A DNA stretch of 64,000 bases from Schmidtea nova (Eukaryota), in NCBI GenBank assembly GCA_044892505.1, contig CM097882.1:163680001-163744000 (forward strand). Direction: 5' to 3'. The notes under the pieces are model-generated. The model did not search any database, was not told the origin of the DNA, and saw only the letters and a program-made list of their open reading frames with translations. Of this stretch, positions 28,955-63,485 are shown piece after piece (the first letter of the stretch is position 1; every line of letters starts with the position of its first letter). The translations under genes and the position numbers were made by a program.

Positions 28955-30010
28955 TTAAGATTGCGGAGCAAATTCATCAGCTCCAATCCATGGCTTAAGA
29001 CGGTCGATGCTAACATTCTTTATTTGGTCTCCAATTTTGATTTTTAACGTTTTATTGTCATCGGATCTTTCTATAACGTCGTATGGTCCAGTGTACGGAT
29101 CTTCTAACGACTTCCTAAATTCAGCTCGAAGCCACACTTTTTTGCAATTAACAAATAGTTTGCTTACAAAACTATGTTGTTTTGGTTGGCTTGTTTTTTT
29201 GTTACTTAGTTGTGAGTCGATTTCCACTTGAATCGATGCTAAATTGTCTTCGATATTGGTTAATATTGGTTCACTAATAACAAAATCTCCGGGTAATCTG
29301 GCTCGACAACCAAATGTGAGTTGCGCTGCCGATGGAGACGCATTAGACTTCGTGCAGTTTCTTAAACTGAGTAGAATCTTGGGGAGATCATGGGCCCACG
29401 TCTTGGATGAGTTTTCTGATGCTGCTCTTATCGAGTTTTTCATGGCTCTGTGCCATCTTTCTATCTTCCCATTGGATTGAGGGTGATATGCTGTTGTTCG
29501 CTTCCTTTCGATTCCCATTACCTTACAGAAATTGGAGAATTTTTCTGATTCAAACTGTGCTCCTTGATCTGTTATAACAATTTCTGGAACACCAAAACGA
29601 CTGATCCACTCTCTTTCAAACGTTCTTACTATCATATCTGTTGTGATATCATATATAGGAATTGCTTCAACCCATGACGTTCCTCGGTCTATCATAGTCA
29701 TGATATATCTTTTGTTGTTGACGCTCGGCAGAGGACCCACTATATCTAGATGAACTGTGATAAACCTTCCTTTGGTTTCTATGGTACCTAACGGAGCATG
29801 TGTGTGTCTTGTTATCTTTGCACCTTGACATCTTTGACATTGTCTACACCACTCTCTGATGTCACTTTTCATCTGTGGCCACACATATCTCGCTTTGATC
29901 AATTCTATCGTTGGTTTGGATGCTGGATGAGATATGTTATGAATTCTTAGAAATTCTTGATATCGGAATATTTTTGGCAGTACTATTCTGGTCTCCCCCG
30001 TAGAGTTGTA
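28955..30010 (-). CDS. int: Gypsy integrase, separated from RT-RH by a 1-nt frameshift near 30011
   Basis: The frame upstream of ORF 29902 reads STGETRIVLP...HNISHPASKPT, then HLDIVGPLP, ITDQGAQFES, HPQSNGKIERWH and GPYDV. One extra T in the TTT run at 30010-30012 would restore a single pol frame. Confidence 0.9.
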   Translation of the reverse strand, partial: YNSTGETRIVLPKIFRYQEFLRIHNISHPASKPTIELIKARYVWPQMKSDIREWCRQCQRCQGAKITRHTHAPLGTIETKGRFITVHLDIVGPLPSVNNKRYIMTMIDRGTSWVEAIPIYDITTDMIVRTFEREWISRFGVPEIVITDQGAQFESEKFSNFCKVMGIERKRTTAYHPQSNGKIERWHRAMKNSIRAASENSSKTWAHDLPKILLSLRNCTKSNASPSAAQLTFGCRARLPGDFVISEPILTNIEDNLASIQVEIDSQLSNKKTSQPKQHSFVSKLFVNCKKVWLRAEFRKSLEDPYTGPYDVIERSDDNKTLKIKIGDQIKNVSIDRLKPWIGADEFAPQS

Positions 30011-31935
30011 AATGGGATGTCATCTATAGTACTACATAACTGGAGACTTGCATTTTTCAGTGTAGATAAGGTCTGATCTTTCCTTTGTTCTTCTTTTAAA
30101 CTTTCTTTAGTGAATTCAACGAAATTAATCTCCACAGTTGATACTTGTAGGTCTTGATTACTGCATTGTCTGGACAAGAGATCGGCAACTACATTGTCTT
30201 CCCCTTTTATGAATTCGATGGTGAAATCAAATTGATCAAGGTATTCGATTATTCGCCATTGTCTTGGCGATGGATCTTTCATATGTCTAGCTCGTAGTAA
30301 AGGTTTGTGGTCCGTCATGACTGTAAAATGAGAACCGTCTAAGAAATGCTTAAAATGTTTTATAGCTAAGAATATTGCCAATAACTCCCTGTCGAAAGTA
30401 GAATACTTCTGTTCGGTTAAATTTAATTTCCTGGAAAAGAAGGCAATAGGAAATGATTTATTTTCTTCGTTGATTTGACTTAGACTTGCTCCAATTGCTT
30501 TAGACGATGCGTCAGTGCATAATAGGAATGGCTTGGATGGGTTAGGGTATGAGACGTTGCTGATTTCGCGTACGGAATTTTTGGCATTCATGAAGGCCTG
30601 TGTATGGCAGTCTTGCCATAAGAGATCTTCCTTTTTATCGGCCGATTTTTGTAACAAGTCATGCAGTGGACTCAGTGTATCTGACAGTCTTGGAATTAGC
30701 CAGTGATAATAGCCGATGCCACCAATAAAACGTCGTAAATCTTGACTATTGGTTGGCTTCTTTAAATTGCTAATTGCTAAGGTGCGTTCCTTCGATGGTT
30801 TGATTCCCTGTTTTGTTAATTCGAAACCCAAAAAATTTACCTTTTCGGTTTGGAATTCGCATTTGCTCTGGTTGACTATGAGACCAGCTGCTTGAAGACT
30901 GGCCATCACACTCGACACGTGTGCTTTATGCTCTGCTTCAGTCTTGGAGAATATCAAAACATCATCAATATAGGACAAGGAATGTTCTTGATGTTCTCGG
31001 AGTACGTTGTCCATGTGTCTCTGAAAAGTTTGAGAGGCGTTTCTAAGTCCAAAAGGCATCTTTGTATATTCGAACAATCCAAACGGTGTTATGACTGCTG
31101 TCTTTGAAATGTCTTCGTCACAAATCGGAATTTGATGATATGCCTTTTCCAGATCTAACTTAGTGAATATATGAGGGTTGTTGATCTTGTTCAGTAAGTC
31201 TTGAATCCTCGGAAGTGGATATCTGTCAGGCTGGGTTATTTCATTTAACATTCTGTAGTCTCCACAAGGCCGCCATGACCCATCCGGCTTCTTAATTACT
31301 ACTAATGGAGATGCCCAGTCACTCTTGCTTGCCCGAATTACACCTTCATTTAAGAGTCTGTCAAATTCTTTCTTTGTTGCAACTAATTTTTCTCCAAAAA
31401 GTGGTCTTTGTCTTTGGGCTACAGGGGAACCGTTGGTGATAATTTGTAGTTTCGTGGTTAATGTAGTTTGATTGTTGATTGTAGCACAAATTTTATCGCA
31501 TAGTCTTTTCCGCGCTTCTGCCCTTTCGTTACTGCTAGGGCAACATATTGATCTGGAATAACAACTAACATCGATTTTGTGACGGGCCAGGAAATCTGCA
31601 CCCAAGATTGGACGAGATATGCCGGCTATGGCAAAAGACCATATAAATTTAGTTCTGAATCCTTCAATAGTAAATTCAATTGTTTTCTGCCCGTGGTATG
31701 TGATTGATGAATTGTTGGCGGATACTAAAGATCGATGTTCTCCATTTCTATCAGGCTTGAAACGGTTTGCGGGAAGGATACTGAGATCAGCGCCTGTATC
31801 TATGAGAAAATTAACTTGTTCTCCATTTATGATTGCTGGTATTTCGAATATTTGTGAGTTGCTTTGTCCCGAGAAAGAGGATATGATTTTGTAGGTTTCA
31901 CTGTTCGGGTTCAATGAAACCTTCTCTCGTTTCCC
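29983..31935 (-). CDS. pol: Gypsy Pol (PR-RT-RNase H), reached by -1 frameshift at G GGA AAC (31935-31929)
   Basis: LIDTGA protease motif, YIDD RT motif, CTDAS...ELLAI...TDHKPL...NVVADLLSR RNase H. The listed ORF start is TTG, and the slippery heptamer is in the correct phase. Confidence 0.93.
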   Translation of the reverse strand, partial: GKREKVSLNPNSETYKIISSFSGQSNSQIFEIPAIINGEQVNFLIDTGADLSILPANRFKPDRNGEHRSLVSANNSSITYHGQKTIEFTIEGFRTKFIWSFAIAGISRPILGADFLARHKIDVSCYSRSICCPSSNERAEARKRLCDKICATINNQTTLTTKLQIITNGSPVAQRQRPLFGEKLVATKKEFDRLLNEGVIRASKSDWASPLVVIKKPDGSWRPCGDYRMLNEITQPDRYPLPRIQDLLNKINNPHIFTKLDLEKAYHQIPICDEDISKTAVITPFGLFEYTKMPFGLRNASQTFQRHMDNVLREHQEHSLSYIDDVLIFSKTEAEHKAHVSSVMASLQAAGLIVNQSKCEFQTEKVNFLGFELTKQGIKPSKERTLAISNLKKPTNSQDLRRFIGGIGYYHWLIPRLSDTLSPLHDLLQKSADKKEDLLWQDCHTQAFMNAKNSVREISNVSYPNPSKPFLLCTDASSKAIGASLSQINEENKSFPIAFFSRKLNLTEQKYSTFDRELLAIFLAIKHFKHFLDGSHFTVMTDHKPLLRARHMKDPSPRQWRIIEYLDQFDFTIEFIKGEDNVVADLLSRQCSNQDLQVSTVEINFVEFTKESLKEEQRKDQTLSTLKNASLQLCSTIDDIPFTTLRGRPE

Positions 31936-32846
31936 TGGTTCTCTCTGTTGTTGTTAAAAGTGTTGTTGTTGTTGAATTTGTTGTTGTTGTTGAATTGGTT
32001 GTTGTTGTTGAATTGGTTGTTGTTGTTGAAATTGTTGTTGTTCATTGAGGATATGTTTGACGGTTCAAGATTTTGATATTTCTCTCTGATGTATTTTTCT
32101 GATCGATAGTTGTCGTTCTGATTTGCATTCCAATCACATGGCGGCTGACATTTCCTCGCCCTATGCCCAAATTTACTATGATAAAAACATAACTTACTGG
32201 TGCTTTTATTCCTCAATTGTTGACGTATTACATTGATTTCTTCCTGTAGTTCCATAATTGTTCTCGTCTTATCTCCTAACTCTTGAGTATTGCAATTTTC
32301 GTGTTCAACTGTCTTTACTGATTGCCGCTTTGATAACATTATTCTGTCTGCTGTGACTGCTAATTTTCGAAGGTCCGTCGTTGGCATCGATAATAGGATG
32401 TCCTGAACAGAGCTTGGTAATAGTCGCATGAACAATTCCCGAGATATAGGACTGTTGAATGGATCCATGGCTGTATCTATTCTTTGTATTTGCCCCGTAA
32501 TGTGCTGAAGTGCTTCTGATGGAGATCGATCTCCAAGGCATTCTTCTCTCATCAATTCTGTTATCGATATTTTTCTTGATAGCTCAAATTCTGCTAGGAT
32601 TGCTTCTTTCAGAGTTGAGTACGGAAGCTCGGTTTCTGAGTCCAATAGATGTTCGTATTTTGATAGCATTGTTGTTGGAAGATTTGAAATTAAATAAAAA
32701 TATTTTGTAGTTTCTTCTGTAATTCTTGATATCTTGAAACTAGCCTCCACTTGTTTGAACCACAGACTCTGGTTCTGAAAAATTGCTGGAATTTTGACCG
32801 AAACATGGTCAACTTGGGAGTTGCTGACACCATTTATAAGATTCAT
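31911..32846 (-). CDS. gag: Gypsy Gag
   Basis: VKIPAIF...LWFKQVEASF...IT...KY; CFYHSKFGHRARKCQPPC knuckle; Asn-rich C-terminal repeats. Confidence 0.92.
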   Translation of the reverse strand: MNLINGVSNSQVDHVSVKIPAIFQNQSLWFKQVEASFKISRITEETTKYFYLISNLPTTMLSKYEHLLDSETELPYSTLKEAILAEFELSRKISITELMREECLGDRSPSEALQHITGQIQRIDTAMDPFNSPISRELFMRLLPSSVQDILLSMPTTDLRKLAVTADRIMLSKRQSVKTVEHENCNTQELGDKTRTIMELQEEINVIRQQLRNKSTSKLCFYHSKFGHRARKCQPPCDWNANQNDNYRSEKYIREKYQNLEPSNISSMNNNNFNNNNQFNNNNQFNNNNKFNNNNTFNNNRENQGNERRFH

Positions 32847-37721: not shown

Positions 37722-38937
37722 CACTCATACCTCGCTATACGGCTGCTCTTTATACGGCTTTTCGCTATAACGGCCTACTTTAATTACGGCACTTTTTCGA
37801 TTTACGGCCTAAAATGTTTCGTTATACGGCCAAAAAAAGTGTGAAAAAAGGTGCGAAAAAAACATGAATGTACATATTTTCTTGCGTTGTCGCCACAGTG
37901 TAGGTGCAATAGCCACTTTTAAGGCATATTATTTACGTAGAACATTTCGAAAACTTATAAACGTAACTGATGGTGAATCTTCGATTAAACAATTTTGGAA
38001 AAACTACAACATTAAAGATGCGTTAGACAACATTAGCGAATCGTGGAAGGAATTGAAATCAACCACAATGAACCATGTTTGGAAAAAAATGTGGCCAGAA
38101 TGCATAAAAACTGAAGATCCTGAAGTTGATTCTCTTACTGAAATAAGACAAAGCATATTGAACCTAGCGAATGATCTTGGTTTTGAGGATTTGGAAGAAG
38201 GTGATGTGCTTGATTTGCTAAATGCTGATAGAGAACCCCTTTCACACGAGGAACTGGTCTATATCGAAGAGGACCGATCACTTGATGAGGAGCCAGAGCC
38301 TGATGTATGTAAACAGCTAACCTTAAAGAACTTGTCCAGTGCGCTTTCTCATTTCGAACAAGGAATAAAAATCCTTCTTCAAAGTGATCCAGACGTAGAA
38401 CGCAGCGCTAACGTTTTTCGCGGAATTAACTCAGCGATTAACTGTTATGTAGAACTGCAAAAAGAAGCAAGAACCAAGGCAAGACAAACAACGTTGGATA
38501 AATTTCTTAAAAAATCATCTAAATCTACAACAGCGGAAAATGATGATGACATTATATTGCAGCTTACCGATTCTTCATGTTCGTCTTCAGATTAGAACTC
38601 TGTCTTTAAAAATTTTAATTTATGTATTTTATTATGTATCAATTTATTAATTTCGATTTTATTAATGAATTTGTTTTTGTTTTTTTTTATTTCAGTTTAT
38701 TGTTATATATAATATGTACTTGTTATTTATTTTTATTTTATATGTAAGCATTTTTAAATGAAATAAAAAGAAAAAAATGCATTTTAAACTAAAAACTACG
38801 TTATTTTATAAAAAATTGGAACCAATCCTATTGAATTTATATGGAATTGTATCAAAATATTTGATTCGTTATGCGGCGTTTCGCTTTGCGGCCAACTTTC
38901 CTGGAACGTATCTAGGCCGTAAAGCGAGGTATGAGTG
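37722..38937 (+). mobile_element. pogo/Tigger internal-deletion derivative
   Basis: TIRs CACTCATACCTCGCT(A/T)TACGGC with TA TSDs. ORF 37864-38595 keeps only the transposase C-terminal part (ATFKAYYLRRTF...WK...I...W). Confidence 0.9.
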
Positions 38938-50433: not shown

Positions 50434-53400
50434 TCAATATATACCGGTGGATGTAGATGGCTGATCACGCAATTGCTGCTCCATCCTCACCAGGTATTCG
50501 TGGAGTCTGCGCGATTCAGCCGTTTCGCCATCATCGAACTCCTCATCATCAAATCCATCAGGTTCGGCTGGGGTAATTGTTTCATCATAACCTATAATAG
50601 TATTTTCTACCCTATAGTGCCCATATGCAAAACTTTTGTTTTTCGACACCCAATTGCGTTTGTCGTCGTTGCAATTGAGTGCCGTTTTTGTATTTTTGAC
50701 ACTATAAACCTGATGATTTTTTGAGACTATACGAAACTGCGGGACTTTATATATTTTACTTGTTGTGTAACAGTCTAGGTAATGCGAATGGTTAAGTCCC
50801 GCAGTAGCCAAACATATGCCCTTGGCTTTTAAACACTCCTCGTCGCCAAGTAAACTATAGCATTTAGGGCGAAGAAAAACCCACTCTTCATATTTGAAGC
50901 CCTTATTTTCGTCCTTAAACTTTCCTATAACAGAATCCAAATTACGCGAAAATAAGGGATGGCTCGGGTCATAGTTCGAAGTATCTAAAAGTTGATCCCT
51001 CACCATAGCGGGCAAAAGAACAGAAAGCCTACAATTAACAATTTCAAGAAAAAAGGAGTCTGTGTCTCCTGCTGCAATATTAATCTTACAATTAAACTCT
51101 TTCCTATATTTCTCTAACTCTATATATTGTAGTTCATACATTCTTAGTTTAGACAAGTCCAAGACCGTCTGTCCTATATAACTTGGCCTATCTAAACACA
51201 CAGACTCCTTCCTCAAAAGCACTGATATAAGATTATGGTCAATTTTCGTTGATTTCCTAAAATACGGGCTACTGCTATATGTTATTAATTTACGTGCCGA
51301 ATTGCACAGTCTTAAATTTATACGTTTTTTCAGATTCTCTACGGTTTTGCCGTAGAGACTGTTATTTAATAACTTAAAATAATTTTTGTCGAGTTTCGTG
51401 GTGGAAGAAGCTCTCAAAGCAGTATTTGTATCAACGTATTTCTTAAAAAGCCTACTTTGATGGTATTTAATAGCTCGATGTATTTTGGTCACTACAACAC
51501 CTAACCTCAGAAACATCTGCAAAAGTCGCCAATGAAGCACATAGTTTTTCTTAGGCATGTGCGTCAAAAGCAACTTATGCACCTTCGAACCTGGCACACA
51601 CATCTTTTCAGCAGCTACTGGTAAATCATCCAGTAAGTCGTGAATAGATGCCGGTATCTCTAAATCCACTTCTATGGTATAACCATAGTTAAGTGAACAT
51701 AAATCAACCGTAGTGCACTCCAACAAGATGTCATGAAGCAAGTGGTCATCCGTGACCCAAACAAAGTCCCCGTCCGGTAAGTTTTGTGAAAGAGCCCAGC
51801 CATACAGATTATTAATATCTATATACAGCAACTCTGTATCTGGGCCTGATTTAACATGATGTTTATTAACGAAAGTGAGGCCGCCCCTGATTCCACCCTC
51901 AAAAAAGTTGTACATCTCCATATCTTGCAAAAGCTCGATAGGAGATTCCAAAGTCATTAATGCAGAACACCAGCTCATACCCGGTATACCCAAAAAATTC
52001 AACGGCTCAAGTTTATTATGAGCTATACTCTTTGCACGAAATTGTTGAAAATAATCAGCCAAAAGAAATATGTCGAGTTTCATGTAAACCATCATATAAT
52101 CAAATAATGAGGTACACGAATTTTCTCTCCATATTTCTTTTGCCTTTTCATAATCAGCAATTTCGACACCTTCCCAAATCGGCGGCAATTCAGTGATCGA
52201 CCTCAAGACAGATAAAGATGTAGCAACATCATATGGAAAAATTCCCTTACTGGTGATAATAGTCCCGGTAAATTCCGAAGAAGTAAGAGGAAAAGATGTT
52301 AGAGTTTTTACTAAGTTATTTAGAGATTCGCTGGCAAATTGATACGAATCGATAAACTTCACTGTGAGTGATCCGATTCTCGCAAAAAGACTGAGAAACT
52401 TCTCACTGGTGACAGGAACACAGCTAATGTTCCACGATTCGTATTTAGAAAGTCCGAATTTGAGGATATGATGTAAATCATATCCCCGTAGATTATGAAA
52501 AACTATCGGCAAAGTGTGTCGAATTTGCCTATTTATATTACATTCGTTGCATGCTGCTCCTAGGTAAGCACCTGTAAAGTGATCGTGGTCTTTAACAGGA
52601 TTTACTAAAATATTTTCACACAAGTAGCAGTGTGTTGCATAAGAAAAATGTTGCATGTCTTCGTAGGTTAATATTATTTGCTTATTTTTATTTGCGAAAT
52701 AATAGGGCGTTACAATTTTTCGACTTATATTTTCAATTTCTTGCAGGAATTTGGCAACGCAATCAAGGCCATAGAAGGATTTATATAATTTAACCCCAGT
52801 GAAATTATTAATAAGTAATAAACCCGCAGAAATGGGCAAATGTTTTTGGTAATATTTCGAGTCGCGAGGTAAAATTGCCTCAAAATCGGCATAAATTACA
52901 AAAGGAGGGGTCACTGTCTTCGTCCAGTCGCTAAAACGTAAAAATTTATTATTAGGAAGTGTATACAAAGTTGTGCCTATTTGGTTGGCATCACAAAGAC
53001 CACGATGTCTCTTGAATGTATCTGAATTACGGAAGCCATGCAAGCACCTAGGACACCATTTATTATAAATTCTCACTGGGGTTATGGCCGAAGTTTTACA
53101 ATTTAAAAATTTGTCGATGTTATATATTCCTGCGTAATGAAATTCTTTTTTATTTTCAATTAAAAGTAGGTTTATGACAGTGCCCCCCACTACTTTACTT
53201 TTATAGATAATATCGATGAATGGATGTTTCATCACTTCACTTTTATTAGTCAAGTCAACTAACGCATTTTCGTCATACGATAATACATTAATTGCATAAC
53301 CGGGGTTTGATAATTCAAATCTGCTAATGTTACTTAGCTTCATTGGCATATCATTTATATCAAAGCGAAGTGATGTCAAGTTATAAGATGTTGGTAATTG

Positions 53401-54482
53401 TCGAATTTCATCATCAACCTGATTATAATTTTTAACAGACAAGACACTATAAAGGAAGCAAAGATTGTCGGTGTTATTGACATTGATAATGCAATCCTTA
53501 TTAAGTAAAGATTTCGGTGTTGAAAGAAATTTTTTACCTCTTAATCTGGTAATTTCTGAGTATTTCGTTATTACAAAACTAATATATTCTATTTTATTTA
53601 ATTTCCAATTTGAACCCTTCTCGTTCATTTGGATAATTTTTTCGTTGAGATGTGTAACGCCCTCATCAATGAAATCAGTCGTCCATACACGCGCTGAATT
53701 TGAAATGACAAAAGACTGGTATTCATCGTCTTTCATCATTTCAACCTTTATACAAAATTGGATCTTAACAGATTTCATGGCAGAAATAATCGATGTTAAT
53801 TTTTCTAGTAAAAGAGATGGAACAGAAAGATTATTTAAATTTAAATGTGCAACATCCATCTTAACGATGATGTGCGAATTATTGAGATCAGAATCAACAG
53901 ATATTAACCCTAAACCTATTTGCTTAACAGAGTAACAGTTTAAAACTATAGGGTCTATTTCCTCTTCATCTGACGAAATAACAACCACATCGTCATCATC
54001 GTCACTTATATCAATAACCTCAAATTTACCTATTTTATTTGGTGTTTCACATACTGTTTCTGTATTTGTTCTTTTTAATAATTTGGGAACACATTCCACA
54101 TTATTGATTATTTGGTTGGGAACACAGTCCACATTGCAAGAGGTTGGGACAGAGTCCACATTAATAATTACTTGTTTGGGAACGCAGTCCACATTACTTT
54201 TTAATAATTTGGGAACACTGTCCACATTATTTTGCTTATTACTATTTTGTTGAATGTTTTTCGCGAAAATTGAATTAAATAAATTCTTTTTAGAACCATT
54301 GAATTGTGTTAAATGGTTTCTGTGATTATTATAAAATTGTGTGTAGGTGCATGTATCTAAAGTTTTGCATGTAGGGCAAATAAGATAGAAAATACTATTA
54401 TATTTGTAATAATAGTACTTTTCCATAAGACTATGACAGTCATTATGAAAAGTACTATTACAATAAGAACTGTATAGTTTAC
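50434..54482 (-). CDS. polB: Protein-primed family B DNA polymerase, main exon (exon 5)
   Basis: Exo motifs YADFE, HNLRGYD and YMKLD; KGIFPY; Pol motifs YIDINNLYG, KLLNNSLYGK and AGDTDS; C2HC finger; EndoVII-like insert. Confidence 0.97.
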
Positions 54483-54599
54483 CTAAATTTATCAAAATAT
54501 CAATATTTTATTATAAAAAATAATGTTATAAAGTATATAATAATTATTATACAATCGATATTGAATTTAAACTATAAATTCAATATCGGATGTATAATA

Positions 54600-55260
54600 A
54601 TGTCATGTATCATAAAAATTTTATAATTTATCATTTCTCATAAAATATCTTTTCTCATAAAATAAGATTGTCATAAAATCGATCATTATAATAAAATTTT
54701 CATAGTTTCATAGTCATAAAATCAATCTTTTTAATAAAATTTCATATTCATAAAATCAATCTTTTTAATAAAATTTTCATAGTTTCATTGTCATAAAATC
54801 GATCATTATAATAAAATTTTCATAGTTTCATTGTCATAAAATCAATCTTTTTAATAAAATTTTCATAGTTTCATTGTCATAAATTCGATCATTATAATAA
54901 AATTTTCATAGTTTCATTGTCATAAAATCGATCATTATAATAAAATTTTCATAGTTTCATTGTCATAAAATCAATCTTTTTAATAAAATTTTCATAGTTT
55001 CATTGTCATAAAATCGATCATTATAATAAAATTTTCATAGTCATAAAATATCTTTTCTCATAAAATTTTCATAGTCATAAAATCGATCATTTTTAATAAT
55101 ATTTTCATAGTCATAAAATCAATATTTTTAATAAAATTTTCATAGTCATAAAATCGATCATTTTTAATAATATTTTCATAATCATAAAATCAATATTTTT
55201 AATAAAATTTTCATAGTCATAAAATCAATATTTTTAATAAAATTTTCATAGTTTTATTGT
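54600..55260. repeat. AT-rich tandem array (~33-43 bp units) inside polB intron 4
   Basis: Unit aaaatcgatcattataataaaattttcatagtttcattgtcat and variants. Confidence 0.9.
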
Positions 55261-55425
55261 ACAATATTTATTTATAATTACTATTTTATTATTTAATAAC
55301 TTTGATGTTATAATTAAATAATAAAATAGAACTTATAAATAAAATTTGTACAATAAAAGTTAATTTATAAAAAAATTGAAATAAATAATTTATAAATAAT
55401 TTATAAAAAATAAATAAAATCATAC

Positions 55426-55941
55426 ATTTCTGCCGACCATTATAGCGGTCATCTTCTGGTGCAGCAACATCCCTAATAAGGGGCATGGGTTCATCCCTAA
55501 TAAGGGGCATATCAGCATCATCCCTAATAAGGGGCATATTTTCATCCCTAATCAGGGGTATATTAATTTCGGAAGTTTCTTCGGCTTTAAATTAATCATT
55601 TAATAATAATAAATAAAAGAATAAAAGAAACAATTACCATCGATATCAACGTTTAATCTTTCGTTTCTGCTAGCTGCATAGTATTGAGTTGTTAATTGTA
55701 CATTTGTTACTGTAATAATAATAATAATAACAATAATGAAATTAGTATTTTTTAAAATTTTTACCATTTTCATTCTCTTTTTCAGTATCTTTTTCGGTAT
55801 TTAAATTGGTTGAAATCTTCATGTTGAGATTCATTTTTCCTATAATTAATTTGTTATAAAATTTATAAAATAAATAAAATAAAAAATACCAAATCTATTC
55901 CTACGGATATTTTCTTTAATCGATTGAGAAATGTTGTTCAT
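55426..55941 (-). CDS. polB: Upstream coding exons 1-4 of polB (55941-55890, 55839-55765, 55709-55638, 55584-55426)
   Basis: GT-AG introns of 50, 55, 53 and 943 nt, all phase 1. The joined frame is open into the main ORF and gives 1468 aa. Confidence 0.7.
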
Positions 55942-56432
55942 TGTTTAATAATAATAATAATTTGAAATTTTTAAAAGGTTTGTTTAAATTGTGACGAAAT
56001 AATGAAAACATATAGTATATATCACGTTTATTACAAACTTTATTCACGAACCAATCACAAGCGAGATAGGGTAGAAAAAGTATGTGTGCACACTGAGTAT
56101 GTATGTTAAAAATCTCTCACCAAGTATGTGTGTTAATAATTCACTCACCAAGTATGAATCATGTCTTTGTTATATTGCACGATGCATGTCGGATGCAACG
56201 ATACAAAGACACTACGTGACTAAAGTGTTTATGAAATATCTTATGGGTGTAGATGCAGATGTGAATACACCCAAGTCGATTTATATGTGAAATAATTGAG
56301 TGTCTGCATGCGTGCTTGCATGCAATTTCTTTATGATTATCGAAAAGTATAGCTAGATGGATGTTAATCTGCAAATTGGATGTGAATTCTGCAAGTTTAT
56401 AAAAAATAATAAATAAAACACGAATAATACAT

Positions 56433-56834
56433 TTATTGTTTTAAATAATCAATTACACCAGACAAGCATCCTTTATATGCACACATACTATGATCTTTAT
56501 ATGGACATGAGATATTTTCTGGAACATCTTCAAATTCTTTAAAATTATATTTAATTAATCTCAATTTCGGGAAATATTTCTTCAAAACTTGCAACTTTTC
56601 ATTATCTGTAACATAGAATATAGCTCCTTTATTTTCAATATCATCCATTATACATTTTGGGCAAAAATAATCTTGTCCTTCAAACGATTCTATACGATCA
56701 GGCCAGAAAGATAAATCACTGTATATATAATACAAGGGTGTGAAAATACTATTTACATTCATAATGCATAATTCCTTAATAATTGTTCCTCCAATATCAT
56801 TATAACCGTACATATCAATAAAATAACAAGTCAT
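56433..56834 (-). CDS. Small Polinton accessory protein, possibly RNase H-like/DEDD fold with a C-terminal Cys/His cluster
   Basis: FIDMYGY...IIKELCI N-terminus and CPYKDHSMCA; intact ORF inside the gene block. Confidence 0.55.
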   Translation of the reverse strand: MTCYFIDMYGYNDIGGTIIKELCIMNVNSIFTPLYYIYSDLSFWPDRIESFEGQDYFCPKCIMDDIENKGAIFYVTDNEKLQVLKKYFPKLRLIKYNFKEFEDVPENISCPYKDHSMCAYKGCLSGVIDYLKQ

Positions 56835-56866
56835 TTTTTACAATAACATTTATTATACTAAATTGT

Positions 56867-57243
56867 TTATAACATTGATTTTAGCCATGCAAGGCAATGT
56901 TGTCCACAAGTGATTGTTAATGGATGTTGATACCGAATTCTATTATACACAATAGGTTTACCAATAGTTTGCAATTTTCGAACAAGTAAATTTGGATAAT
57001 AATATCCAAAGGGATCAAATACATGTATTCGATCCGGTTTCACGTAAACCGCAATCCAATGTTCACCACCCAAAGTAGAAGTGTGAGTATTTACAATGAT
57101 GGCTTGATTCATTTTCAAATAAGGAATTTTATCTAACGGAAAAACTCCAAGAAATTGGTTTCCCAATAGTTTTTTACCTTGTTGTAATACCTGAATAGAA
57201 CTAATTAAAAATAAATAATTATTCAATTAAAAACTTACTCCAT
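56867..57243 (-). CDS. pro: Adenain-like cysteine protease (5-nt exon 57243-57239, 38-nt intron, exon 57200-56867)
   Basis: GVFPLD, GEHW, FDPFG and YQ....CGQHC motifs; ATGGA|GTAAGT...TTAG|TTCT gives MDSIQV. Confidence 0.88.
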
Positions 57244-57296: not shown

Positions 57297-58517
57297 TCAA
57301 ACCAATACTGTTCGATTGGCAGTAATTTGTACTTCATTTTCAAACAATCCATATATAATTACATGAACCGGTTCATCAATGGGTTTTGCAAACTTTATAT
57401 CTAGCCTTAAATTACCGTTTTGTGGGATTTGACTTTGATTCAAATCGAAATCGGGAGCCAGAACAAATGTAAAGAATGGATATTTTGCTTTAAATTCATC
57501 CAGACTTATACCACAATTCAAGTTTTTATCCAAATATCCTAAATTTCGGACAAGACTTTGCATATATGTGGCACTAAAATTATCATTTTCAAAATCTTGA
57601 GTATAAGTTTCTCGATAATCGGTATTTTTCGATAATGATAATGAAGTTACATTAAAGTGTTTGAATGAAGATGAAGATTCAGCATATGATCCGTTATATT
57701 GATTTTCAGTTTGAAAAGCCACAAGAATGAAATTAGGCATTCTTCTATCTCCAAATATTTGCTCCTTGTAAAATGATGATGCACCTTTCCCAATAGCAAA
57801 CGATACGATTTCTTTGGATTTTATCGGATAAATTGCATGTTTGCTATTTAAACCAATTTGATGACCGGCCAAAACTGAAGATTCACACCGAACTCTTCTT
57901 ACCATTAATTTAGCGTCTACTAATTGGAGTATTGGTTTCCCAGTTGCCGATTTCAGTGATAATGCAGAATCAGATCGCTTCAATCTAATATGTACATTAA
58001 CTCCGGGAAGTAAGTATTTAGGTTGATCCATAAAATCAAGTTGTAATGATGAACACATGTTAAAAAGTTTCGATCCCTTGATCCACTTTTTTCTATCGTC
58101 ACTTGCACCATATCCCATTGGAGTAAGACAAGTTTCTTTTGAATCGTTCGTATAATTTAAAATAGTTTCGATTATTGCCTTGTGTGCATATGTATTGTTT
58201 CCACCCTCGATTTTTATATTATTAAATCCAAGAATCACATCTTTGAAAAGTGTATGAAACAAGTAATTATTAGGTACTACATCACTCGCATCAACTAATT
58301 TATTTTTATCTTTATCTACAACTTTGACCGTAACGGATAATAACGTATCGTTCAAATCCAAATATTCGGTTGCCGATCCATTAATGTAAAATTCAACATC
58401 ATTTCTACTATCTGTAATAGAATTCATTGGAAACACATCTTCAAACACCCCATATTCAATAACTGCTTGGGGGCTTGGTCGATCAAAAATACATAATTCA
58501 GATTTACCGCAAATCAT
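57297..58517 (-). CDS. MCP: Major capsid protein (double jelly-roll, PY/hexon-like)
   Basis: 406 aa; KSELCIFD, EYLDLNDTLL, YLLPGVNVHIRL, FKHFNV and GNLRLDIKFAKP motifs typical of Polinton PY. Confidence 0.9.
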   Translation of the reverse strand: MICGKSELCIFDRPSPQAVIEYGVFEDVFPMNSITDSRNDVEFYINGSATEYLDLNDTLLSVTVKVVDKDKNKLVDASDVVPNNYLFHTLFKDVILGFNNIKIEGGNNTYAHKAIIETILNYTNDSKETCLTPMGYGASDDRKKWIKGSKLFNMCSSLQLDFMDQPKYLLPGVNVHIRLKRSDSALSLKSATGKPILQLVDAKLMVRRVRCESSVLAGHQIGLNSKHAIYPIKSKEIVSFAIGKGASSFYKEQIFGDRRMPNFILVAFQTENQYNGSYAESSSSFKHFNVTSLSLSKNTDYRETYTQDFENDNFSATYMQSLVRNLGYLDKNLNCGISLDEFKAKYPFFTFVLAPDFDLNQSQIPQNGNLRLDIKFAKPIDEPVHVIIYGLFENEVQITANRTVLV

Positions 58518-58894
58518 TCTTCAAATATTGTTCCATGACCTTTCATTCGTTTGTTTATACGTCTTCGTTTACGTCTTGGTCCTACTGGTACAGGTTCCGG
58601 TTCATTTTTTGTAAACATATTTGTAATTGAAGGAATCATTTTTGTTACAGTAGGTATAGCTTTATTAACTGCGGCCAAAGCATTTGTTTTCAATGATGGT
58701 AATATTTTATTATCTTTCATGATAACATCCTTGGCAGTATTGAATCCAAAACTACCTAATCGCTTAAGTAGTGGAAGTGCAAATCTACCAATAGTTTTCA
58801 ACCAACCTGATCCATACTGTTTACCTACAAAATACGGTAATTCGCCACCAGTTTGGCTATTACTGTACAAAGAAACTATATCTGGATTACTCAT
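58514..58894 (-). CDS. Basic virion/core protein with QxGG and QYGSG plus amphipathic helix
   Basis: QTGG, KQYGSGWLKTIGRFALPLLKRLG and PRRKRRR. Confidence 0.7.
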   Translation of the reverse strand: MSNPDIVSLYSNSQTGGELPYFVGKQYGSGWLKTIGRFALPLLKRLGSFGFNTAKDVIMKDNKILPSLKTNALAAVNKAIPTVTKMIPSITNMFTKNEPEPVPVGPRRKRRRINKRMKGHGTIFEE

Positions 58895-59939
58895 GATGTT
58901 TTCGAAAATGTAGAGTCAAATGAGTTTTCGAATTTTTTGGAAAGTTTATTAAATTACCTTTATCATCTCGGATATTTATTTCTATATTGTTTATACAGGA
59001 TGTTGAAACAGTTACATACATTGGATTTTCAACTTGTATTTGAACAACCTCATCCTGTTCATATTTTTCAATCCATACCGATTTCAGTAAAGGAACCAAT
59101 GAATCTCCAACAATTATAGGTTCAATAATGTTACTGTAAATGAACATTTGCTGATGAAGTTTAATTATTTTCGGTTTATTTATTCCAACAGTGAAGCTTC
59201 CATTTTGAGCATATGTTGCTTTCAATAAACCCAATGTTTTTACTAGGTTATTATCAAAAGTTATTTCGCTAACATCTGGATTCAAACTGAATTTGAAGTA
59301 AGTATCATCTAACAATTCCACCGACTTAAAAATACTTGCACAATTTAGAATTAAATATGATTTCATTTCATCCAGTTTCGATATGTATAAATTATCGGCA
59401 AATGTATGGATAAATACAGAATCAGCCTTATACTCCATCTTTAATCTAATATTTTCAGTAACTGGACCATCTATACCATAATATGGTAACGGTATCTTGT
59501 ATGTATCTGTAGGACTTACAATACTCTGCTTCGTTAATCCCATTCTTTTCGCCATTGCCAAAGTATCAAATGTTATAGTGAAGGGAAAATGATCACAGGT
59601 AAAATAAATAGATTGCCTATCACTCAACATTTGAGCAATATCATCGGCAGGATTAGATGTGTCAACTTCACAAAATTGATTGTTAATAATCAAATTTTTA
59701 TATTTTGTATGTATAGTTTTCTTTTTGTATCGAATTTCAGCTTTACTGTAAAATGGAAATGGATTATACACAAATGTAAAGTCTAAGAGAGCGACTTCCC
59801 AAATCCCGTCCAAATACATTGGATTTTGGAGATTGACCATGAAATTACTTGCTGTATTATCTGGATGTATGTCTGGACAACTGTTGCTAGGTAGAATCAT
59901 ATAAAAATTCATTTTACTAGGTTTTTTGACGATATCCAT
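58887..59939 (-). CDS. mCP: Minor capsid protein (penton, PX-like)
   Basis: FYMILPSNS...NTASNF...WEVAL; C-terminal FIYSNIIEPIIVGD...LL and IEINIRDDKG...LHFRK. Confidence 0.88.
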   Translation of the reverse strand: MDIVKKPSKMNFYMILPSNSCPDIHPDNTASNFMVNLQNPMYLDGIWEVALLDFTFVYNPFPFYSKAEIRYKKKTIHTKYKNLIINNQFCEVDTSNPADDIAQMLSDRQSIYFTCDHFPFTITFDTLAMAKRMGLTKQSIVSPTDTYKIPLPYYGIDGPVTENIRLKMEYKADSVFIHTFADNLYISKLDEMKSYLILNCASIFKSVELLDDTYFKFSLNPDVSEITFDNNLVKTLGLLKATYAQNGSFTVGINKPKIIKLHQQMFIYSNIIEPIIVGDSLVPLLKSVWIEKYEQDEVVQIQVENPMYVTVSTSCINNIEINIRDDKGNLINFPKNSKTHLTLHFRKHHE

Positions 59940-60953
59940 GATGGTTCCTTATATCCATGCCACTTGACATAGTATTGTTTATCCTTACCTACCATTTTAG
60001 TTTTCAATATTTTTTGAATTCTAAATATTGTCGGTGGAGGTATAACTTGTAATTCTTGTTCATAGAATTTCCCACTGACTATATTGTTATCAGAGTCAGA
60101 AATAGTATACATGACAGGATTCTGGACTGTGTTGACCTTCGATATTTTAAATACCTCATCACTCCAATTACTATCAAAATTTTTAATGAATGGCGATGCA
60201 CTAATTTTACTAATTCGAACATGATCACCTATTTTATATTTCGGTTTCTTGATTATTGTATCACTCACGATATTTTCAGTATTAACTACTTCTGCAGGTT
60301 TCCTGCCATTTATACCTCGATGAGCAGAATGATTATAACTATGGATCATTTGTGGTAAAACATTAATCCATGTTTTATTACCTTGATGTACAAAATATTT
60401 TTTGAGCCGATCTCGTAATGTACGATTAAATCTCTCGACATGAGCGGCTTTGAATTGCGAGAATACCGAATAATGATTGATTCCCTTGATAACTTCCTTG
60501 ACTTTACTGTTGTAAAATTCCTTACCTAAAAAATATTAAATCAATAAATTATAATTAAAATTTACCCAAATCGGTTTGTAAATTTGTTGGACGATCCTTT
60601 TTCATCATTGCTTTGATCGCGATTGCCATATCATTACCAGATTTCGATTTTACTGCGATTGCCCGCGCAAAACGACTGTAAACATCAATACATGTTAAAA
60701 TATACTTGTATCCCTTGTTAATTTTTGAATACGGAATCATTTCCATCAAATCCATTTGCCACAAATCATTGATTCTATACGTTTTATATGATCTAGTTGG
60801 AAACCGTTTCAGCATCGGTTTGTTTAGACTGTATGCAAGTTGCCCCGATAACCAGCTTTGTGTCTGTTGTTTCGACTTCTGTACTTTTTTCCTTAACTTT
60901 TCGACTCCACCGAAACCGGCTTCGTCTTTCGGGTTCGTCCAGATCTTCTCCAT
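59909..60953 (-). CDS. int: Retroviral-like (rve) integrase with SH3-like region and chromodomain; 2 exons (60953-60566, 60525-59909), 334 aa
   Basis: WQMDL, CIDVYSR, TDLG|KEFYN across a 40-nt intron, VERFNRTL; YYVKWHGY...SWI chromodomain. Confidence 0.93.
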
Positions 60954-61008: not shown

Positions 61009-61545
61009 TTATGACGTTCTTTTTCCCAATAAACCAGCACCACCTAATAACGATAAAGCTAGGGGTAATAATGCAGCAATAAACCCTCCTTGTTGTTTAT
61101 ATATTATTTTACGCATAAGTTTTTTATTTTTTGTTTTTACAAGTGATAACAATGGTTTTTTATGCTTGTTCAAAACCCGACGATTAGAAGGAGTTAGATT
61201 CATTTTACCTCGTACGACTTTAATTAAAATAGCGAGTAAATCATCAATAACGTAATTGGGAAACGACTGAAGAATACCCATTCTTCTAGCACTGGGGGCT
61301 TTTAGCAATGCATTAAAGAACGGAAAACTCCGATGATGTATTTGTTTAGGATTAGATTTCAAAATAGGGGGAATTTGATTTTGTTTGGGAAAATTATCCA
61401 TAATTAGTTTTTTCGAAGGAGTATAACTTGTTTTAGAAACGGGTTTCGAAACTGATTTCTTTGTTTTCTTTGTTTTCTTTGTTTTCTTCATTGTTTTTCT
61501 TGCCTTTATCAAGCGCTCAAACTTTACTCTAGATTTCATTAACAT
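61009..61545 (-). CDS. Basic protein with adenovirus pX-like C-terminus
   Basis: Lys-rich N-terminus; QQGG-FIAALLPLALSLLGG resembles adenovirus pX GG-ILPLLIP. Confidence 0.7.
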   Translation of the reverse strand: MLMKSRVKFERLIKARKTMKKTKKTKKTKKSVSKPVSKTSYTPSKKLIMDNFPKQNQIPPILKSNPKQIHHRSFPFFNALLKAPSARRMGILQSFPNYVIDDLLAILIKVVRGKMNLTPSNRRVLNKHKKPLLSLVKTKNKKLMRKIIYKQQGGFIAALLPLALSLLGGAGLLGKRTS

Positions 61546-61565: not shown

Positions 61566-62189
61566 TTAACTTTGTTTATAAACCATGGCTCCTTCCTTGT
61601 TAAAAATATCAGTTCTAACTCTTAAATCATCACTGCATTGTTGCGTAAAATCCAAGAAAAGATATCCATGAGGAGATTTTGTAGCATCCTGAAACGCATC
61701 AATCAAGAAATTCCGATTAGAGGGGTATGCTTGTCTTGCCAGAAAATCAATAACTGTTGCATCACGAGGATTTTTAAAAACAACAAGATATTGAACATTT
61801 AAATTACGAGTTCGATGACTACCACCCTGATGAAATAAATTCTGAGTAATAAAAATAACTGTAACACCTTTGTGTCTAGCGATTTTCGTAAATAAATTAT
61901 TAAAATCCTTTTCTTTATTTGCTTCTTGATACAAGTCATCAATAATAATCACATCCCCTTCTCTTAATCTAGATGACCAGTTTTTATCGAAACCTTTTAT
62001 GATTGTCATTTTTATTTTACAAAACTGATCTTGAGTCATACCGCTTTCGTCGTCAGCACCCCTATGCCAATAAATTTTATTAAATTTTGATTTGAATAAT
62101 TTAGATTGTAATAATTTACAAACAAATAAAGTTTTTCCGCTCCCGCTCGGACCGACAATTTGATAAACTGCATCATTTCTTAATTCCAT
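61566..62189 (-). CDS. A32/FtsK-like genome-packaging ATPase
   Basis: Walker A GPSGSGKT, Walker B IIIDD, ARH arginine finger, ITQ motif. Confidence 0.93.
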   Translation of the reverse strand: MELRNDAVYQIVGPSGSGKTLFVCKLLQSKLFKSKFNKIYWHRGADDESGMTQDQFCKIKMTIIKGFDKNWSSRLREGDVIIIDDLYQEANKEKDFNNLFTKIARHKGVTVIFITQNLFHQGGSHRTRNLNVQYLVVFKNPRDATVIDFLARQAYPSNRNFLIDAFQDATKSPHGYLFLDFTQQCSDDLRVRTDIFNKEGAMVYKQS

Positions 62190-62278
62190 GTTTGTAATTA
62201 TTTATTAGTATTATTATTGTTTATATTGATTAAAATATTAATTATCTCTTTGTTGTTAGATTTAAAATATTTTTAATA

Positions 62279-62746
62279 ATGATTAGAAACATTAATTACA
62301 AGGGTAAGACAGATGTGTCGCACATGATATTTCCAACTGGGAAACCACAGCAAATTGTAGATAGAAGTGGAAAATACCCAATAATATACTTTAAGACAGG
62401 CAGATATAGAATAATGGGATGCAAGGAATTTATTAGTGATGAAAAAGTAAAGTCTCACGATTTAACAATACAATCGATAACTGTGACTGCAGATTTAGGA
62501 TTTATTTGTAATTTAAATGAGTTATCTAAATTGATTCCATGTGTTTATGAACCAGAATTATTTCCAGCTTTAAGATATACAAAATATAATCCAATGTGTG
62601 TCAATATTTTTGCTAGTGGTAAAGTAGTCATATTAGGATTAAAAAATAAAGACTATGCTAATATAGTTGATAATATTATTAACGATATAAAATCAATTAT
62701 AGAAGATAAAGCCTTTGTTGATTTCATACTAACATGTGACTCATGA
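62279..62746 (+). CDS. tbp: TATA-binding protein (TBP) homolog encoded by the element
   Basis: Repeat 2 IQSITVTADLG...YEPELFPALRY...VNIFASGKVVILGLK matches the TBP core. Repeat 1 IRNI...IIYFKTGRYRIMGCK is shortened. Confidence 0.88.
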   Translation: MIRNINYKGKTDVSHMIFPTGKPQQIVDRSGKYPIIYFKTGRYRIMGCKEFISDEKVKSHDLTIQSITVTADLGFICNLNELSKLIPCVYEPELFPALRYTKYNPMCVNIFASGKVVILGLKNKDYANIVDNIINDIKSIIEDKAFVDFILTCDS

Positions 62747-62923
62747 CTGCAATATTCATGCAATGGAAATGCACGATTCTGATTGGTCGAGTGTGTATCG
62801 ATAGAATAAAGACATGTTGTGCATACTTTATTCTTATTGGTTGAAAGTTGTTCATTTCGTACATGATGTGTGTTTCTATCGTATATATACTAAGAACATT
62901 CGTTCATAATTTAGATTTTAAAA

Positions 62924-63485
62924 ATGTGTTTAAAAGAAACTATGTTAAAAAGTGGTAAGGATTTTAATTAATTCTTTTCAATTTTAATATAATTTCTTTT
63001 TAGAAAAATTAATGAATGTCCTATATGGAAAGCTGGAGGAGATGTTCCCGAATTTAATGACATCCCTGACTTATACGGCACCAGAACTCTTTCCGTATAA
63101 GATTCAGGTGCTGACTGGAATTGATGTCAATAAAATCATCTTGGATCATCGGGCAAATAATCTCAATGAATTGCCAGTGGTAGCCGAGCACTTTCTCTGT
63201 GCATATCAGTGTGGAAATTGCGTGGAGAGGATCCGCCGATTCAATATTTGGCTCCTCAGAAACGCATTGAAAGAATTCGAGAATCAAAACCTCGAAACAA
63301 TTGAGGAAGAAGAAGATGCAGATATGAAGGAGTCCTGGCCAAATTCGACTCCGGATCAATCTGATTGCCCAACTTTAGATGGGCCATATCCTATCGAATC
63401 GGATGAGCCAATGGAGTCTCCCGAATCTCCAGATTGTGCGGAATGCCACCGTAAGGCAGAGGATTGTGATCCGTCAGACATTTAA
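62924..63485 (+). CDS. Unknown protein with acidic/Pro-rich tail (exon 62924-62954, 49-nt intron, exon 63004-63485)
   Basis: AGT G|GTAAGG...TTTTAG|AA keeps the frame into ORF 63012. Confidence 0.6.

What the first reader, a model, noticed from the sequence alone, without database searches (positions are those of the whole stretch)
62279..62746. The Polinton-like element encodes its own asymmetric TATA-binding protein
Seen: a 155-aa ORF with an intact second TBP repeat, including YEPELFP and IFASGKVV. The first repeat is about 13 residues shorter but keeps the F..G motif. Known: YEPELFP is the TFIIB-binding stirrup, the N-terminal repeat contacts TFIIA, and TBP is not a Polinton core gene, although TBP-like proteins occur in large nucleocytoviruses. 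Inference: this ~16+ kb element may nucleate its own Pol II pre-initiation complex on AT-rich viral promoters while escaping TFIIA/TAF/Mot1/NC2 control, or may act as a TFIIB decoy. Together with the AP-1/CRE arrays this suggests a dedicated transcription-control system.
Basis: partly seen in the sequence, partly recalled or inferred. Interest (0 to 1): 0.9.

Follow-up and report, generated by a model that had tools for sequence, protein, structure and literature searches.

The report
Virus-like element's own shortened TATA-binding protein
An integrated adintovirus/Maverick-type virus-like element carries an intact gene for a cut-down TATA-binding protein whose first half has lost its helices; this gene belongs to a large, conserved and almost undescribed viral family.

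Summary
The ORF is real: 62279-62746 (+), 155 aa. Residues 62-134 match Pfam TBP at E=6e-15. A confident AlphaFold model (pLDDT 94) hits only TBPs in the PDB. Residues 1-56 align collinearly with TBP repeat 1 (hhalign 98.6%). That half keeps its beta-strands but has no helix, and is about 30 residues shorter than a normal repeat, not 13.

The gene starts 89 bp from the element's packaging ATPase. It lies in a cluster with pPolB, an rve/chromo integrase, an adenain-like protease and conserved virion ORFs.

Relatives form a large family: 94 word-index hits, and 61 clusters (50% identity) at E<=1e-30. In three independent sets of 16-22 kb metagenome contigs the homologue lies near the same ATPase-integrase-PolB genes. 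Longer family members model as complete two-repeat TBPs, so the window's form looks like a reduced version.

The gene is therefore the element's own, not a host retrocopy. How it works is inferred, not shown: probably it binds promoters and recruits host TFIIB/Pol II. The right end of the element lies outside the window. The only prior mention found is a "TBP" label in figure legends (Starrett 2021).

The parts
62279..62746 (+). TBP-like gene, 155 aa, intact (ATG to TGA)
62279..62446 (+). N-terminal lobe (residues 1-56): reduced TBP repeat 1. The model shows four strands and no helices. It keeps the F-x-[ST]-G-[KR]...G-x-K hairpin.
   Evidence: DSSP of the model. Collinear hhalign to repeat 1 of canonical TBPs. 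Only a 14-column match to the C-half. Column shares.
62447..62698 (+). C-terminal lobe (residues 57-140): complete TBP repeat 2 with a canonical stirrup motif. It is followed by an extended C-terminal helix running to residue 153.
   Evidence: Pfam PF00352 E=6e-15; PDB alignments; model
62190..62278 (.). 89-bp divergent intergenic region (11% GC) between the ATPase start and the TBP start. Presumed promoter region. Too short to hold a terminal repeat.
61566..62189 (-). A32/FtsK-type genome-packaging ATPase, 207 aa, intact
   Evidence: Pfam Pox_A32 E=1.1e-6, 28.8 bits against cut-off 22.8
61009..61545 (-). 178-aa lysine-rich ORF with a KKT repeat and no family hit. Small ORFs sit at the same position in relatives.
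59909..60953 (-). Integrase (rve core plus chromodomain), interrupted. It is split over at least two ORFs in different frames.
   Evidence: Pfam rve E=9.5e-9 and Chromo E=4.4e-5 in separate ORFs. ORF pieces. Relatives have single 341-343 aa genes.
58887..59939 (-). 350-aa ORF of the virion module, unassigned
   Evidence: ORFs of 329-373 aa sit at the equivalent place in relatives.
58514..58894 (-). 126-aa ORF, unassigned
   Evidence: ORFs of 104-114 aa sit at the equivalent place in relatives.
57297..58517 (-). 406-aa conserved ORF (candidate capsid protein, not tested)
   Evidence: ORFs of 408-410 aa sit at the same position in all three sets of relatives (405 aa in L005). No Pfam hit.
56433..57226 (-). 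Adenain-like protease region, in two ORFs in different frames. Only the first ORF has the Peptidase_C5 hit.
   Evidence: Pfam Peptidase_C5 E=3.1e-6, 27.4 bits against cut-off 21.3
54496..56432 (.). AT-rich spacer upstream of PolB, with tandem arrays of 43, 35/71 and 27/51 bp
50434..54495 (-). Protein-primed family B DNA polymerase with an Endonuclease VII-like insert, 1353 aa, intact
   Evidence: Homologues carry PF03175 and PF02945. It is 55% identical to PolBs on the same contigs that carry TBP homologues. A motif B-type match at residue 1041. The window protein itself has no significant Pfam PolB hit.
48222..49068 (.). Arrays of AP-1-like (TGACTCA) and CRE-like (TGACGTCA) sites, periods 11-13, 23, 34 and 37 bp, with a 120-bp repeat between them. 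They may belong to the element's left terminal region; this is unproven.
63012..63485 (+). 157-aa ORF downstream of the TBP gene. Whether it belongs to the element is uncertain.
   Evidence: No homologues, no Pfam family, GC 0.44 against 0.27-0.38 for the element's ORFs

Best explanation
The ORF is the element's own TATA-binding protein homologue. It is a member of a large family of short viral TBPs carried by adintovirus/Maverick-type elements. These elements have no RNA polymerase gene among their annotated genes, so they must use the host's nuclear transcription machinery. Identity and ownership are shown. The proposed mechanism is inferred. The continuous beta-sheet of both lobes would sit on AT-rich or TATA-like promoter DNA of the element. 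The unchanged C-terminal stirrup would recruit host TFIIB and hence Pol II. The N-terminal lobe has lost both helices, and with them much of the upper surface that host regulators of TBP use. The protein could then nucleate initiation on viral promoters with little host control. My confidence is about 0.95 that this is a TBP homologue owned by the element, and about 0.5 for the mechanism.
For: TBP identity: Pfam TBP at E=6e-15. The top 35 PDB sequence hits and the top 44 Foldseek hits are all TBPs. The model has pLDDT 94.3. The family profile aligns collinearly with both repeats of canonical TBPs at 98.6% probability, E=6e-16. Conserved residues: in 44 relatives F38, E93, F95, R99 and F111 are invariant, and E91, P92, L94 and F18 are at 39-43 of 44. 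The stirrup motif is identical to the invariant motif of canonical TBPs. The N-half is as conserved as the C-half, with mean pairwise identity 0.46 against 0.50, so it is constrained and not decaying. Ownership: the gene starts 89 bp from the ATPase, and its GC3 of 0.205 falls within the range of the element's ORFs (0.18-0.41; most 0.18-0.26). Homologues lie within about 0.1-1.2 kb of the ATPase in contigs that also carry an rve integrase, a gene of about 410 aa and pPolB. The window's PolB is 55% identical to the PolBs of those same contigs. No RNA polymerase family appears in any of those gene tables. Longer family members keep H1 and H2 of repeat 1. One of them models as a canonical TBP, with TM 0.80-0.88 and rmsd 2.3-3.0 A.
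Against: There is no functional or expression evidence of any kind. The N-lobe is detected by sequence only through a profile comparison, and that alignment has low confidence in its first 15 columns. There, the position of the first DNA-kinking Phe of repeat 1 aligns with an invariant Pro (P23), while a conserved Phe (F18) lies 5 residues away. So only 3 of the 4 Phe positions are clearly kept. The Asn of strand S1 in repeat 2 of canonical TBPs is Ser (S66, 43/44) in this family, so the DNA specificity may differ from TATA. The window's integrase and protease reading frames are interrupted, so this copy may be inactive. The element's right end was not seen.
Confidence: 0.5

Rival explanations
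1. Decoy or competitor. The protein binds host TFIIB (or host TATA boxes) non-productively. It would titrate the host initiation machinery or shift it between host and viral promoters, rather than nucleating viral initiation complexes itself.
For: The TFIIB-facing stirrup is the best conserved part of the protein. The N-lobe is heavily reduced, and S66 replaces the canonical Asn, which could weaken productive DNA binding.
Against: The N-lobe strands, F38 and the G-x-K hairpin are invariant or nearly so. A pure TFIIB decoy would not need them. Longer relatives are complete TBP folds.
Confidence: 0.2
2. A DNA-binding role outside transcription. The TBP-like saddle would bend AT-rich DNA at genome ends or at a packaging or replication site, working with the adjacent packaging ATPase or with protein-primed replication.
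For: The gene is always near the packaging ATPase (window). TBP-like folds are generic DNA benders (established knowledge).
Against: Conservation of the exact TFIIB-contact motif of cellular TBPs is hard to explain without TFIIB. The gene's orientation relative to the ATPase differs between relatives, so the two are not a fixed operon-like pair.
Confidence: 0.1
3. A host TBP/TRF retrocopy, or a host gene that merely lies next to the element and is decaying neutrally.
For: The right terminal repeat was not found, so the element's boundary is not formally set.
Against: The ORF is intact. It is only 22-26% identical to the canonical eukaryotic TBPs aligned. There are 94 full-length relatives of 145-160 aa with invariant residues. 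Synteny with virus genes holds in three sets of contigs. The gap to the ATPase is 89 bp. Its GC3 matches the element.
Confidence: 0.02

Closest known systems
Cellular TATA-binding protein (eukaryotic TBP, archaeal TBP; Pfam PF00352)
   Same: Homologous. The C-terminal repeat is complete, with the canonical stirrup motif and both Phe positions. The order of both repeats is collinear. All top structural hits are TBPs.
   Different: It has 155 aa against a core of about 180 aa. In the model the N-terminal repeat lacks both helices. Ser replaces the conserved Asn of S1 in repeat 2, and one Phe position is unclear. TMq is only 0.58-0.72. With the family profile, archaeal and eukaryotic TBPs score alike at 79-64 bits, so its origin is unresolved.
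TBP-like proteins of giant viruses (Nucleocytoviricota), e.g. the BFVD hits from Heterosigma akashiwo virus, Terrestrivirus, Aureococcus virus, Marseillevirus, an asfa-like B263R homologue and iridescent viruses
   Same: Virus-encoded proteins with the TBP fold. They are the best viral structural matches, at E 6e-8 to 5e-4.
   Different: They are 190-550 aa with 10-22% identity. Their viruses carry their own RNA polymerase and replicate in the cytoplasm (established knowledge). The element here is about 15-22 kb with no polymerase gene in the tables. No BFVD hit came from a polinton or adintovirus.
Herpesvirus late-gene TBP mimics (BcRF1 / ORF24 / UL87 group)
   Same: Functional analogy from established knowledge: a nuclear DNA virus without its own RNA polymerase uses a TBP-like protein to bring host Pol II to viral promoters. 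They appear as weak Foldseek hits (BcRF1 E=1.4e-2, U58 E=2.5e-3).
   Different: They are large proteins of 570-1000 aa with no detectable sequence homology, and they work within a multi-subunit viral complex. The resemblance is an analogy, not membership.
'TBP' gene label in MELD-virus maps of Starrett et al. 2021 (PMC8502044, legend of Fig. 5; preprint legends of Figs 5-6)
   Same: A TBP homologue noted in mid-size linear dsDNA viruses with adintovirus-like PolB genes.
   Different: It is only a legend entry ('similar to TATA binding proteins', 'homologs of host proteins'). The text gives no analysis of structure, repeat loss, family size or synteny. I could not check whether those genes belong to this family, because the figures and supplements are not held.

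Membership tests
TBP (PF00352, two-repeat saddle) | Significant match to the TBP repeat profile | tested here: met
   Residues 62-134: E=6e-15, 55.3 bits against a gathering cut-off of 22.9
TBP (PF00352, two-repeat saddle) | Two tandem repeats, each detectable by sequence | tested here: inconclusive
   Pfam finds one stretch only. N-half against C-half gives 14 columns, E=1.2e-3, probability 19%. The family profile does align collinearly with both repeats of canonical TBPs at 98.6%.
TBP (PF00352, two-repeat saddle) | Pseudo-symmetric fold: each repeat has S1-H1-S2-S3-S4-S5-H2 | tested here: not met
   The model has strands only in residues 1-48 and helices only in the C-lobe. The longer relative P0289 does have the full topology.
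TBP (PF00352, two-repeat saddle) | Two pairs of DNA-kinking phenylalanines | tested here: inconclusive
   F38, F95 and F111 are 44/44 and align with the canonical Phe positions. The fourth position aligns with the invariant P23, with F18 (39/44) nearby, in a low-confidence stretch.
TBP (PF00352, two-repeat saddle) | C-terminal stirrup residues that contact TFIIB | tested here: met
   E91 42/44, P92 43/44, E93 44/44, L94 39/44. The motif equals the invariant motif of canonical TBPs in A2. The contact role itself comes from established knowledge.
TBP (PF00352, two-repeat saddle) | Binds TATA DNA and TFIIB | not testable with these tools
   No complex modelling or assay is available here.
Polinton/Maverick, adintovirus-like element | Protein-primed family B DNA polymerase | tested here: met
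   The 1353-aa ORF has homologues carrying PF03175, at E=0 and 41-60% identity. The window protein itself has no Pfam hit.
Polinton/Maverick, adintovirus-like element | Retrovirus-like (rve) integrase | tested here: met
   rve E=9.5e-9 and Chromo E=4.4e-5. The reading frame is interrupted.
Polinton/Maverick, adintovirus-like element | A32/FtsK-type packaging ATPase and adenain-like protease | tested here: met
   Pox_A32 28.8 bits against 22.8. Peptidase_C5 27.4 bits against 21.3.
Polinton/Maverick, adintovirus-like element | Double jelly-roll major and penton capsid proteins | not tested
   The 406-aa and 350-aa ORFs have no Pfam hit. The size is conserved in relatives. No fold was predicted for them.
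Polinton/Maverick, adintovirus-like element | Terminal inverted repeats flanking the genes | tested here: inconclusive
   No inverted pair has an arm right of 62746. The window ends 1254 bp after the ORF, so the right end is probably outside it.
Giant-virus TBP-like proteins | Encoded by a virus with its own RNA polymerase; protein of about 190-550 aa | tested here: not met
   No RNA polymerase family appears in the window element or in the gene tables of relatives. The protein has 155 aa. The hits are structural only.

The most novel reading that the evidence does not exclude
This family is a natural 'minimal TBP'. Small nuclear DNA viruses of animals, which have no polymerase of their own, would carry a general transcription factor stripped of the N-lobe helices. 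It could then seed Pol II initiation complexes on viral promoters out of reach of the host factors that normally restrain TBP. The longer relatives record the stepwise loss.
Probability: 0.3. Interest if true: 0.75.

Novelty: new variant of a known kind. Interest (0 to 1): 0.55.

Why it matters
Virus-encoded TBPs are known from giant viruses that bring their own polymerase. TBP mimics are known from herpesviruses. A conserved, genuinely homologous and strongly reduced TBP in elements of 15-22 kb that depend on host Pol II would be a new way for a small DNA virus or transposon to take over initiation. The family also offers a natural series, from complete to helix-less N-lobe, showing which parts of TBP are dispensable. 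Finally, it gives a simple marker gene for one lineage of adintovirus/Maverick elements.

Tried and rejected
- Exact look-ups of the window's proteins found nothing, so the source genome and host could not be named. An invertebrate animal, probably an arthropod, is inferred only. The evidence is the named PolB relatives at about 30% identity (Plutella, Prorops, Panonychus) and a Bcl-2 gene in close relatives.
- A homologue search for the downstream 157-aa ORF found nothing, so it cannot show that the element continues past the TBP gene.
- TIR searches found no informative pair. Many long 'inverted repeats' at 44-46.5 kb and four-frame 'ORFs' at 49.1-50.3 kb are artefacts of masked N runs. The N runs were left as they are.
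- Pfam and PDB sequence searches did not recognise the PolB directly. It was identified through its homologues.
- Rfam and tRNA scans of the window were empty.
- The promoter/terminator scanner is bacterial and says nothing here.
- The apparent archaeal affinity of the single-sequence search disappeared with the family profile. I reject it as a composition or sampling effect.
- Literature searches found no analysis of a polinton or adintovirus TBP beyond the legend labels.
- dN/dS and a wider co-occurrence survey were not done (see referred steps).

Full report
**Observation**

Both quoted motifs are in it, YEPELFP at residues 90-96 and IFASGKVV at residues 110-117. Residues 62-134 match the Pfam TBP repeat (PF00352) at E=6e-15, 55.3 bits against a cut-off of 22.9. 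A sequence search of the PDB returns 35 TBP chains and essentially nothing else, the best at 4.7e-19.

**Fold**

An AlphaFold2 model built on 44 relatives is confident: mean pLDDT 94.3, pTM 0.83. Its 44 best Foldseek matches in the PDB are all TBPs. They align over about 160-178 columns, that is over both lobes, with TMq 0.58-0.72.

In the model residues 2-48 form four strands and no helix. Residues 63-153 form a complete repeat (S1'-H1'-S2'...H2') ending in a long C-terminal helix.

By sequence the N-half resembles the C-half only over the 14-residue hairpin, residues 37-50 against 110-123 (E=1.2e-3). The family profile, however, aligns collinearly with both repeats of canonical eukaryotic TBPs: 98.6% probability, E=6e-16, window residues 16-123. 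A gap falls where helix H2 of repeat 1 lies.

The first half is therefore a true but reduced repeat 1. It is about 30 residues shorter than a normal repeat, not about 13, having lost the H1 and H2 segments.

**A family, and a reduction series**

The word-index search found 94 relatives, nearly all 145-160 aa, at 40-62% identity. All come from metagenome or run assemblies, and only JGI annotations name some as TBP. The exhaustive profile search found 61 clusters (at 50% identity) with E<=1e-30 and 827 with E<=1e-10. More than a hundred full-length single-stretch matches have 140-200 aa.

In 44 aligned members:
- F38, M46, G47, E93, F95, R99, P105, V108, N109, F111 and G114 are invariant.
- N4, I5, N6, Y7, Q25, G41, E91, P92, L94 and F18 are kept in 39-43 of 44.
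- The N-half is as conserved as the C-half, with mean pairwise identity 0.46 against 0.50.

That is the signature of a constrained protein, not a decaying copy.

More distant members of 170-200 aa keep segments that align with H1 and H2 of canonical repeat 1. One of them, P0289 (176 aa), models with pLDDT 94.7 as a complete two-repeat TBP. It matches solved TBPs at TM 0.80-0.88 and rmsd 2.3-3.0 A. The window's protein is thus the reduced end of a series that starts from a normal TBP fold.

With the family profile, archaeal and eukaryotic TBPs score alike. The archaeal top hit of the single-sequence search is therefore not evidence of origin.

**Context in the window**

To the left of the gene, all on the - strand, lie:
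- an A32/FtsK-type packaging ATPase (61566-62189);
- a lysine-rich 178-aa ORF;
- an rve integrase with a chromodomain (59909-60953);
- ORFs of 350, 126 and 406 aa;
- an adenain-like protease region (56433-57226);
- an AT-rich repeat-filled spacer;
- a 1353-aa ORF (50434-54495).

Pfam does not recognise the 1353-aa ORF. Its homologues carry the protein-primed PolB domain PF03175 and an Endonuclease VII domain.

This is a Polinton/Maverick of the adintovirus kind. The named relatives of the PolB, at about 30% identity, come from arthropod genomes (Plutella, Prorops, Panonychus). The source genome itself is not in the look-up collections, so the host is inferred only: a very AT-rich eukaryote, probably an invertebrate animal.

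State of the copy: PolB, ATPase, the 406-, 350-, 178- and 126-aa ORFs and the TBP gene are open. Two genes are interrupted.
- The integrase is split over at least two ORFs in different frames (at least one interruption).
- The protease region is split over two ORFs in different frames (at least one interruption).

I did not align either to an intact relative. The exact counts, and whether any interruption is an intron, remain open.

**Does the gene belong to the element?**

No terminal inverted repeat pair with an arm right of 62746 exists in the window, which ends 1254 bp after the ORF. Four other lines answer the question.

1. Only 89 bp of 11% GC separate the ATPase start from the TBP start, which leaves no room for a terminal repeat.
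2. The GC3 of the TBP gene (0.205) falls among the element's ORFs, most of which are 0.18-0.26. The 157-aa ORF downstream is at 0.45.
3. In three independent sets of metagenome contigs of 16-22 kb, the homologue lies about 0.1-1.2 kb from the ATPase. The same contigs hold an rve(+chromo) integrase, a gene of 405-410 aa and pPolB, and further genes follow on the far side of the TBP gene.
4. The window's PolB is 55% identical to the PolBs of those very contigs.

The orientation of the TBP gene relative to the ATPase and PolB differs among the three arrangements, but its neighbourhood does not. In one set a Bcl-2-family gene sits between the ATPase and the TBP gene.

**Mechanism (inferred)**

No gene table of the relatives, and no ORF of the window element, shows an RNA polymerase. 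Transcription must therefore use the host's nuclear machinery.

The conserved features are the sheet of both lobes, three clear Phe positions (F38, F95, F111), and the C-terminal stirrup motif. That motif is identical to the invariant motif of canonical TBPs. By established knowledge this is the TFIIB contact.

The lost features are the two helices of the N-lobe. By established knowledge these form part of the upper surface used by host regulators of TBP.

The most economical reading is a promoter-binding factor that recruits host TFIIB and Pol II to the element's promoters with reduced host control.

There are caveats. The fourth Phe position aligns with an invariant Pro in a low-confidence stretch. 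The S1' Asn of canonical TBPs is Ser here in 43 of 44 members. The DNA target may therefore not be a classical TATA box.

The rival readings are a TFIIB or promoter decoy, a non-transcriptional DNA bender working with packaging or replication, and a host retrocopy. The retrocopy reading is contradicted by the evidence above.

Nothing links them to this gene.

**Comparison with what is known**

In BFVD the best viral structural matches are TBP-like proteins of giant viruses, of 190-550 aa at E 6e-8 to 5e-4. Herpesvirus late-gene TBP mimics appear only as weak hits. None of the hits comes from a polinton or adintovirus.

[quoted passage not shown] 2021 and its preprint. Other papers on polintons, polinton-like viruses (PLVs) and adintoviruses that I checked do not mention it.

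I therefore rate this a new variant of a known kind, namely virus-encoded TBP. It is real, conserved and structurally unusual, but not unprecedented in principle.

(a) Look-ups were made with protein ids of homologues from unnamed metagenome contigs. Their gene tables showed what look like near-complete adintovirus-like genomes, one set with a Bcl-2 gene, so these are probably viruses of animals.
- I could not know what the contigs were beforehand.
- Once I saw it, I made no further look-ups of this kind.
- I did not read, translate, align or search the DNA of loci L001-L006.
- I use only the tables the tool printed.

(b) Early in my planning I recalled a few short canonical-TBP motif strings from memory. 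Every residue statement here rests on tool alignments.

(d) N runs were left untouched. No repaired, joined or consensus sequence was made.

Noticed in passing
window 48222-49068: Dense tandem arrays of AP-1-like (TGACTCA) and CRE-like (TGACGTCA) sites, with periods of 11-13, 23, 34 and 37 bp. A 120-bp repeat (48513-48809) lies between two blocks. There are 26 sites in 1 kb against 4 in the rest of the window.
   Followed up: partly
window 6919-7066, 19192-19327, 41331-41523, 43740-44128, 44308-44552, 44653-44946, 45942-46213, 46306-46469, 49239-50166: Nine runs of N (2769 bases). They create false long inverted repeats at 44.4-46.5 kb and false four-frame 'ORFs' at 49.1-50.3 kb in the mechanical tools. 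They were left unfilled.
   Followed up: yes
window 54620-55563: Upstream of the PolB gene lie tandem arrays of 43 bp (about 9 copies), 35/71 bp (about 7 copies) and 27/51 bp units. This may be a regulatory or origin region of the element.
   Followed up: no
window 62747-63485: The downstream 157-aa ORF (63012-63485) has much higher GC (0.44), two CxxC pairs, an acidic tail and no homologues. Two CCAAT-like boxes and a TATATATA stretch lie upstream of it, along with a short ATG-started stretch followed by a GT...AG interval that might be a 5' exon and intron. It is unclear whether this is an accessory gene of the element or host DNA.
   Followed up: partly
L004-L006, about 9398-9775 (gene tables only): A Bcl-2-family gene (125 aa) sits between the packaging ATPase and the TBP homologue in the ~16-kb contigs, which recur in several samples. 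This points to an animal host for that relative.
   Followed up: no
window 28955-32846 (-): A Ty3/gypsy-type LTR retrotransposon coding region in three ORFs: gag with DUF7041, then protease-RT-RNase H, then an integrase with an H2C2 zinc domain.
   Followed up: no
window 2956-3732 (+) and 37864-38595 (+): One ORF joins an HSP90 middle-domain fragment to a ubiquitin fragment and looks like a chimeric pseudogene. A separate ORF is a DDE_1 (pogo-like) transposase fragment.
   Followed up: no
window 61009-61545 (-): The 178-aa ORF between the integrase and the ATPase is lysine-rich, with a KKT repeat encoded by a 9-bp tandem array (61456-61488). It may be a DNA-condensing core protein. It has no family hit.
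   Followed up: no
window 50434-54495 (-): The PolB carries an Endonuclease VII-like segment around residues 620-654 (E=1.4e-3 here). The same domain is annotated in many homologues (PF02945).
   Followed up: partly
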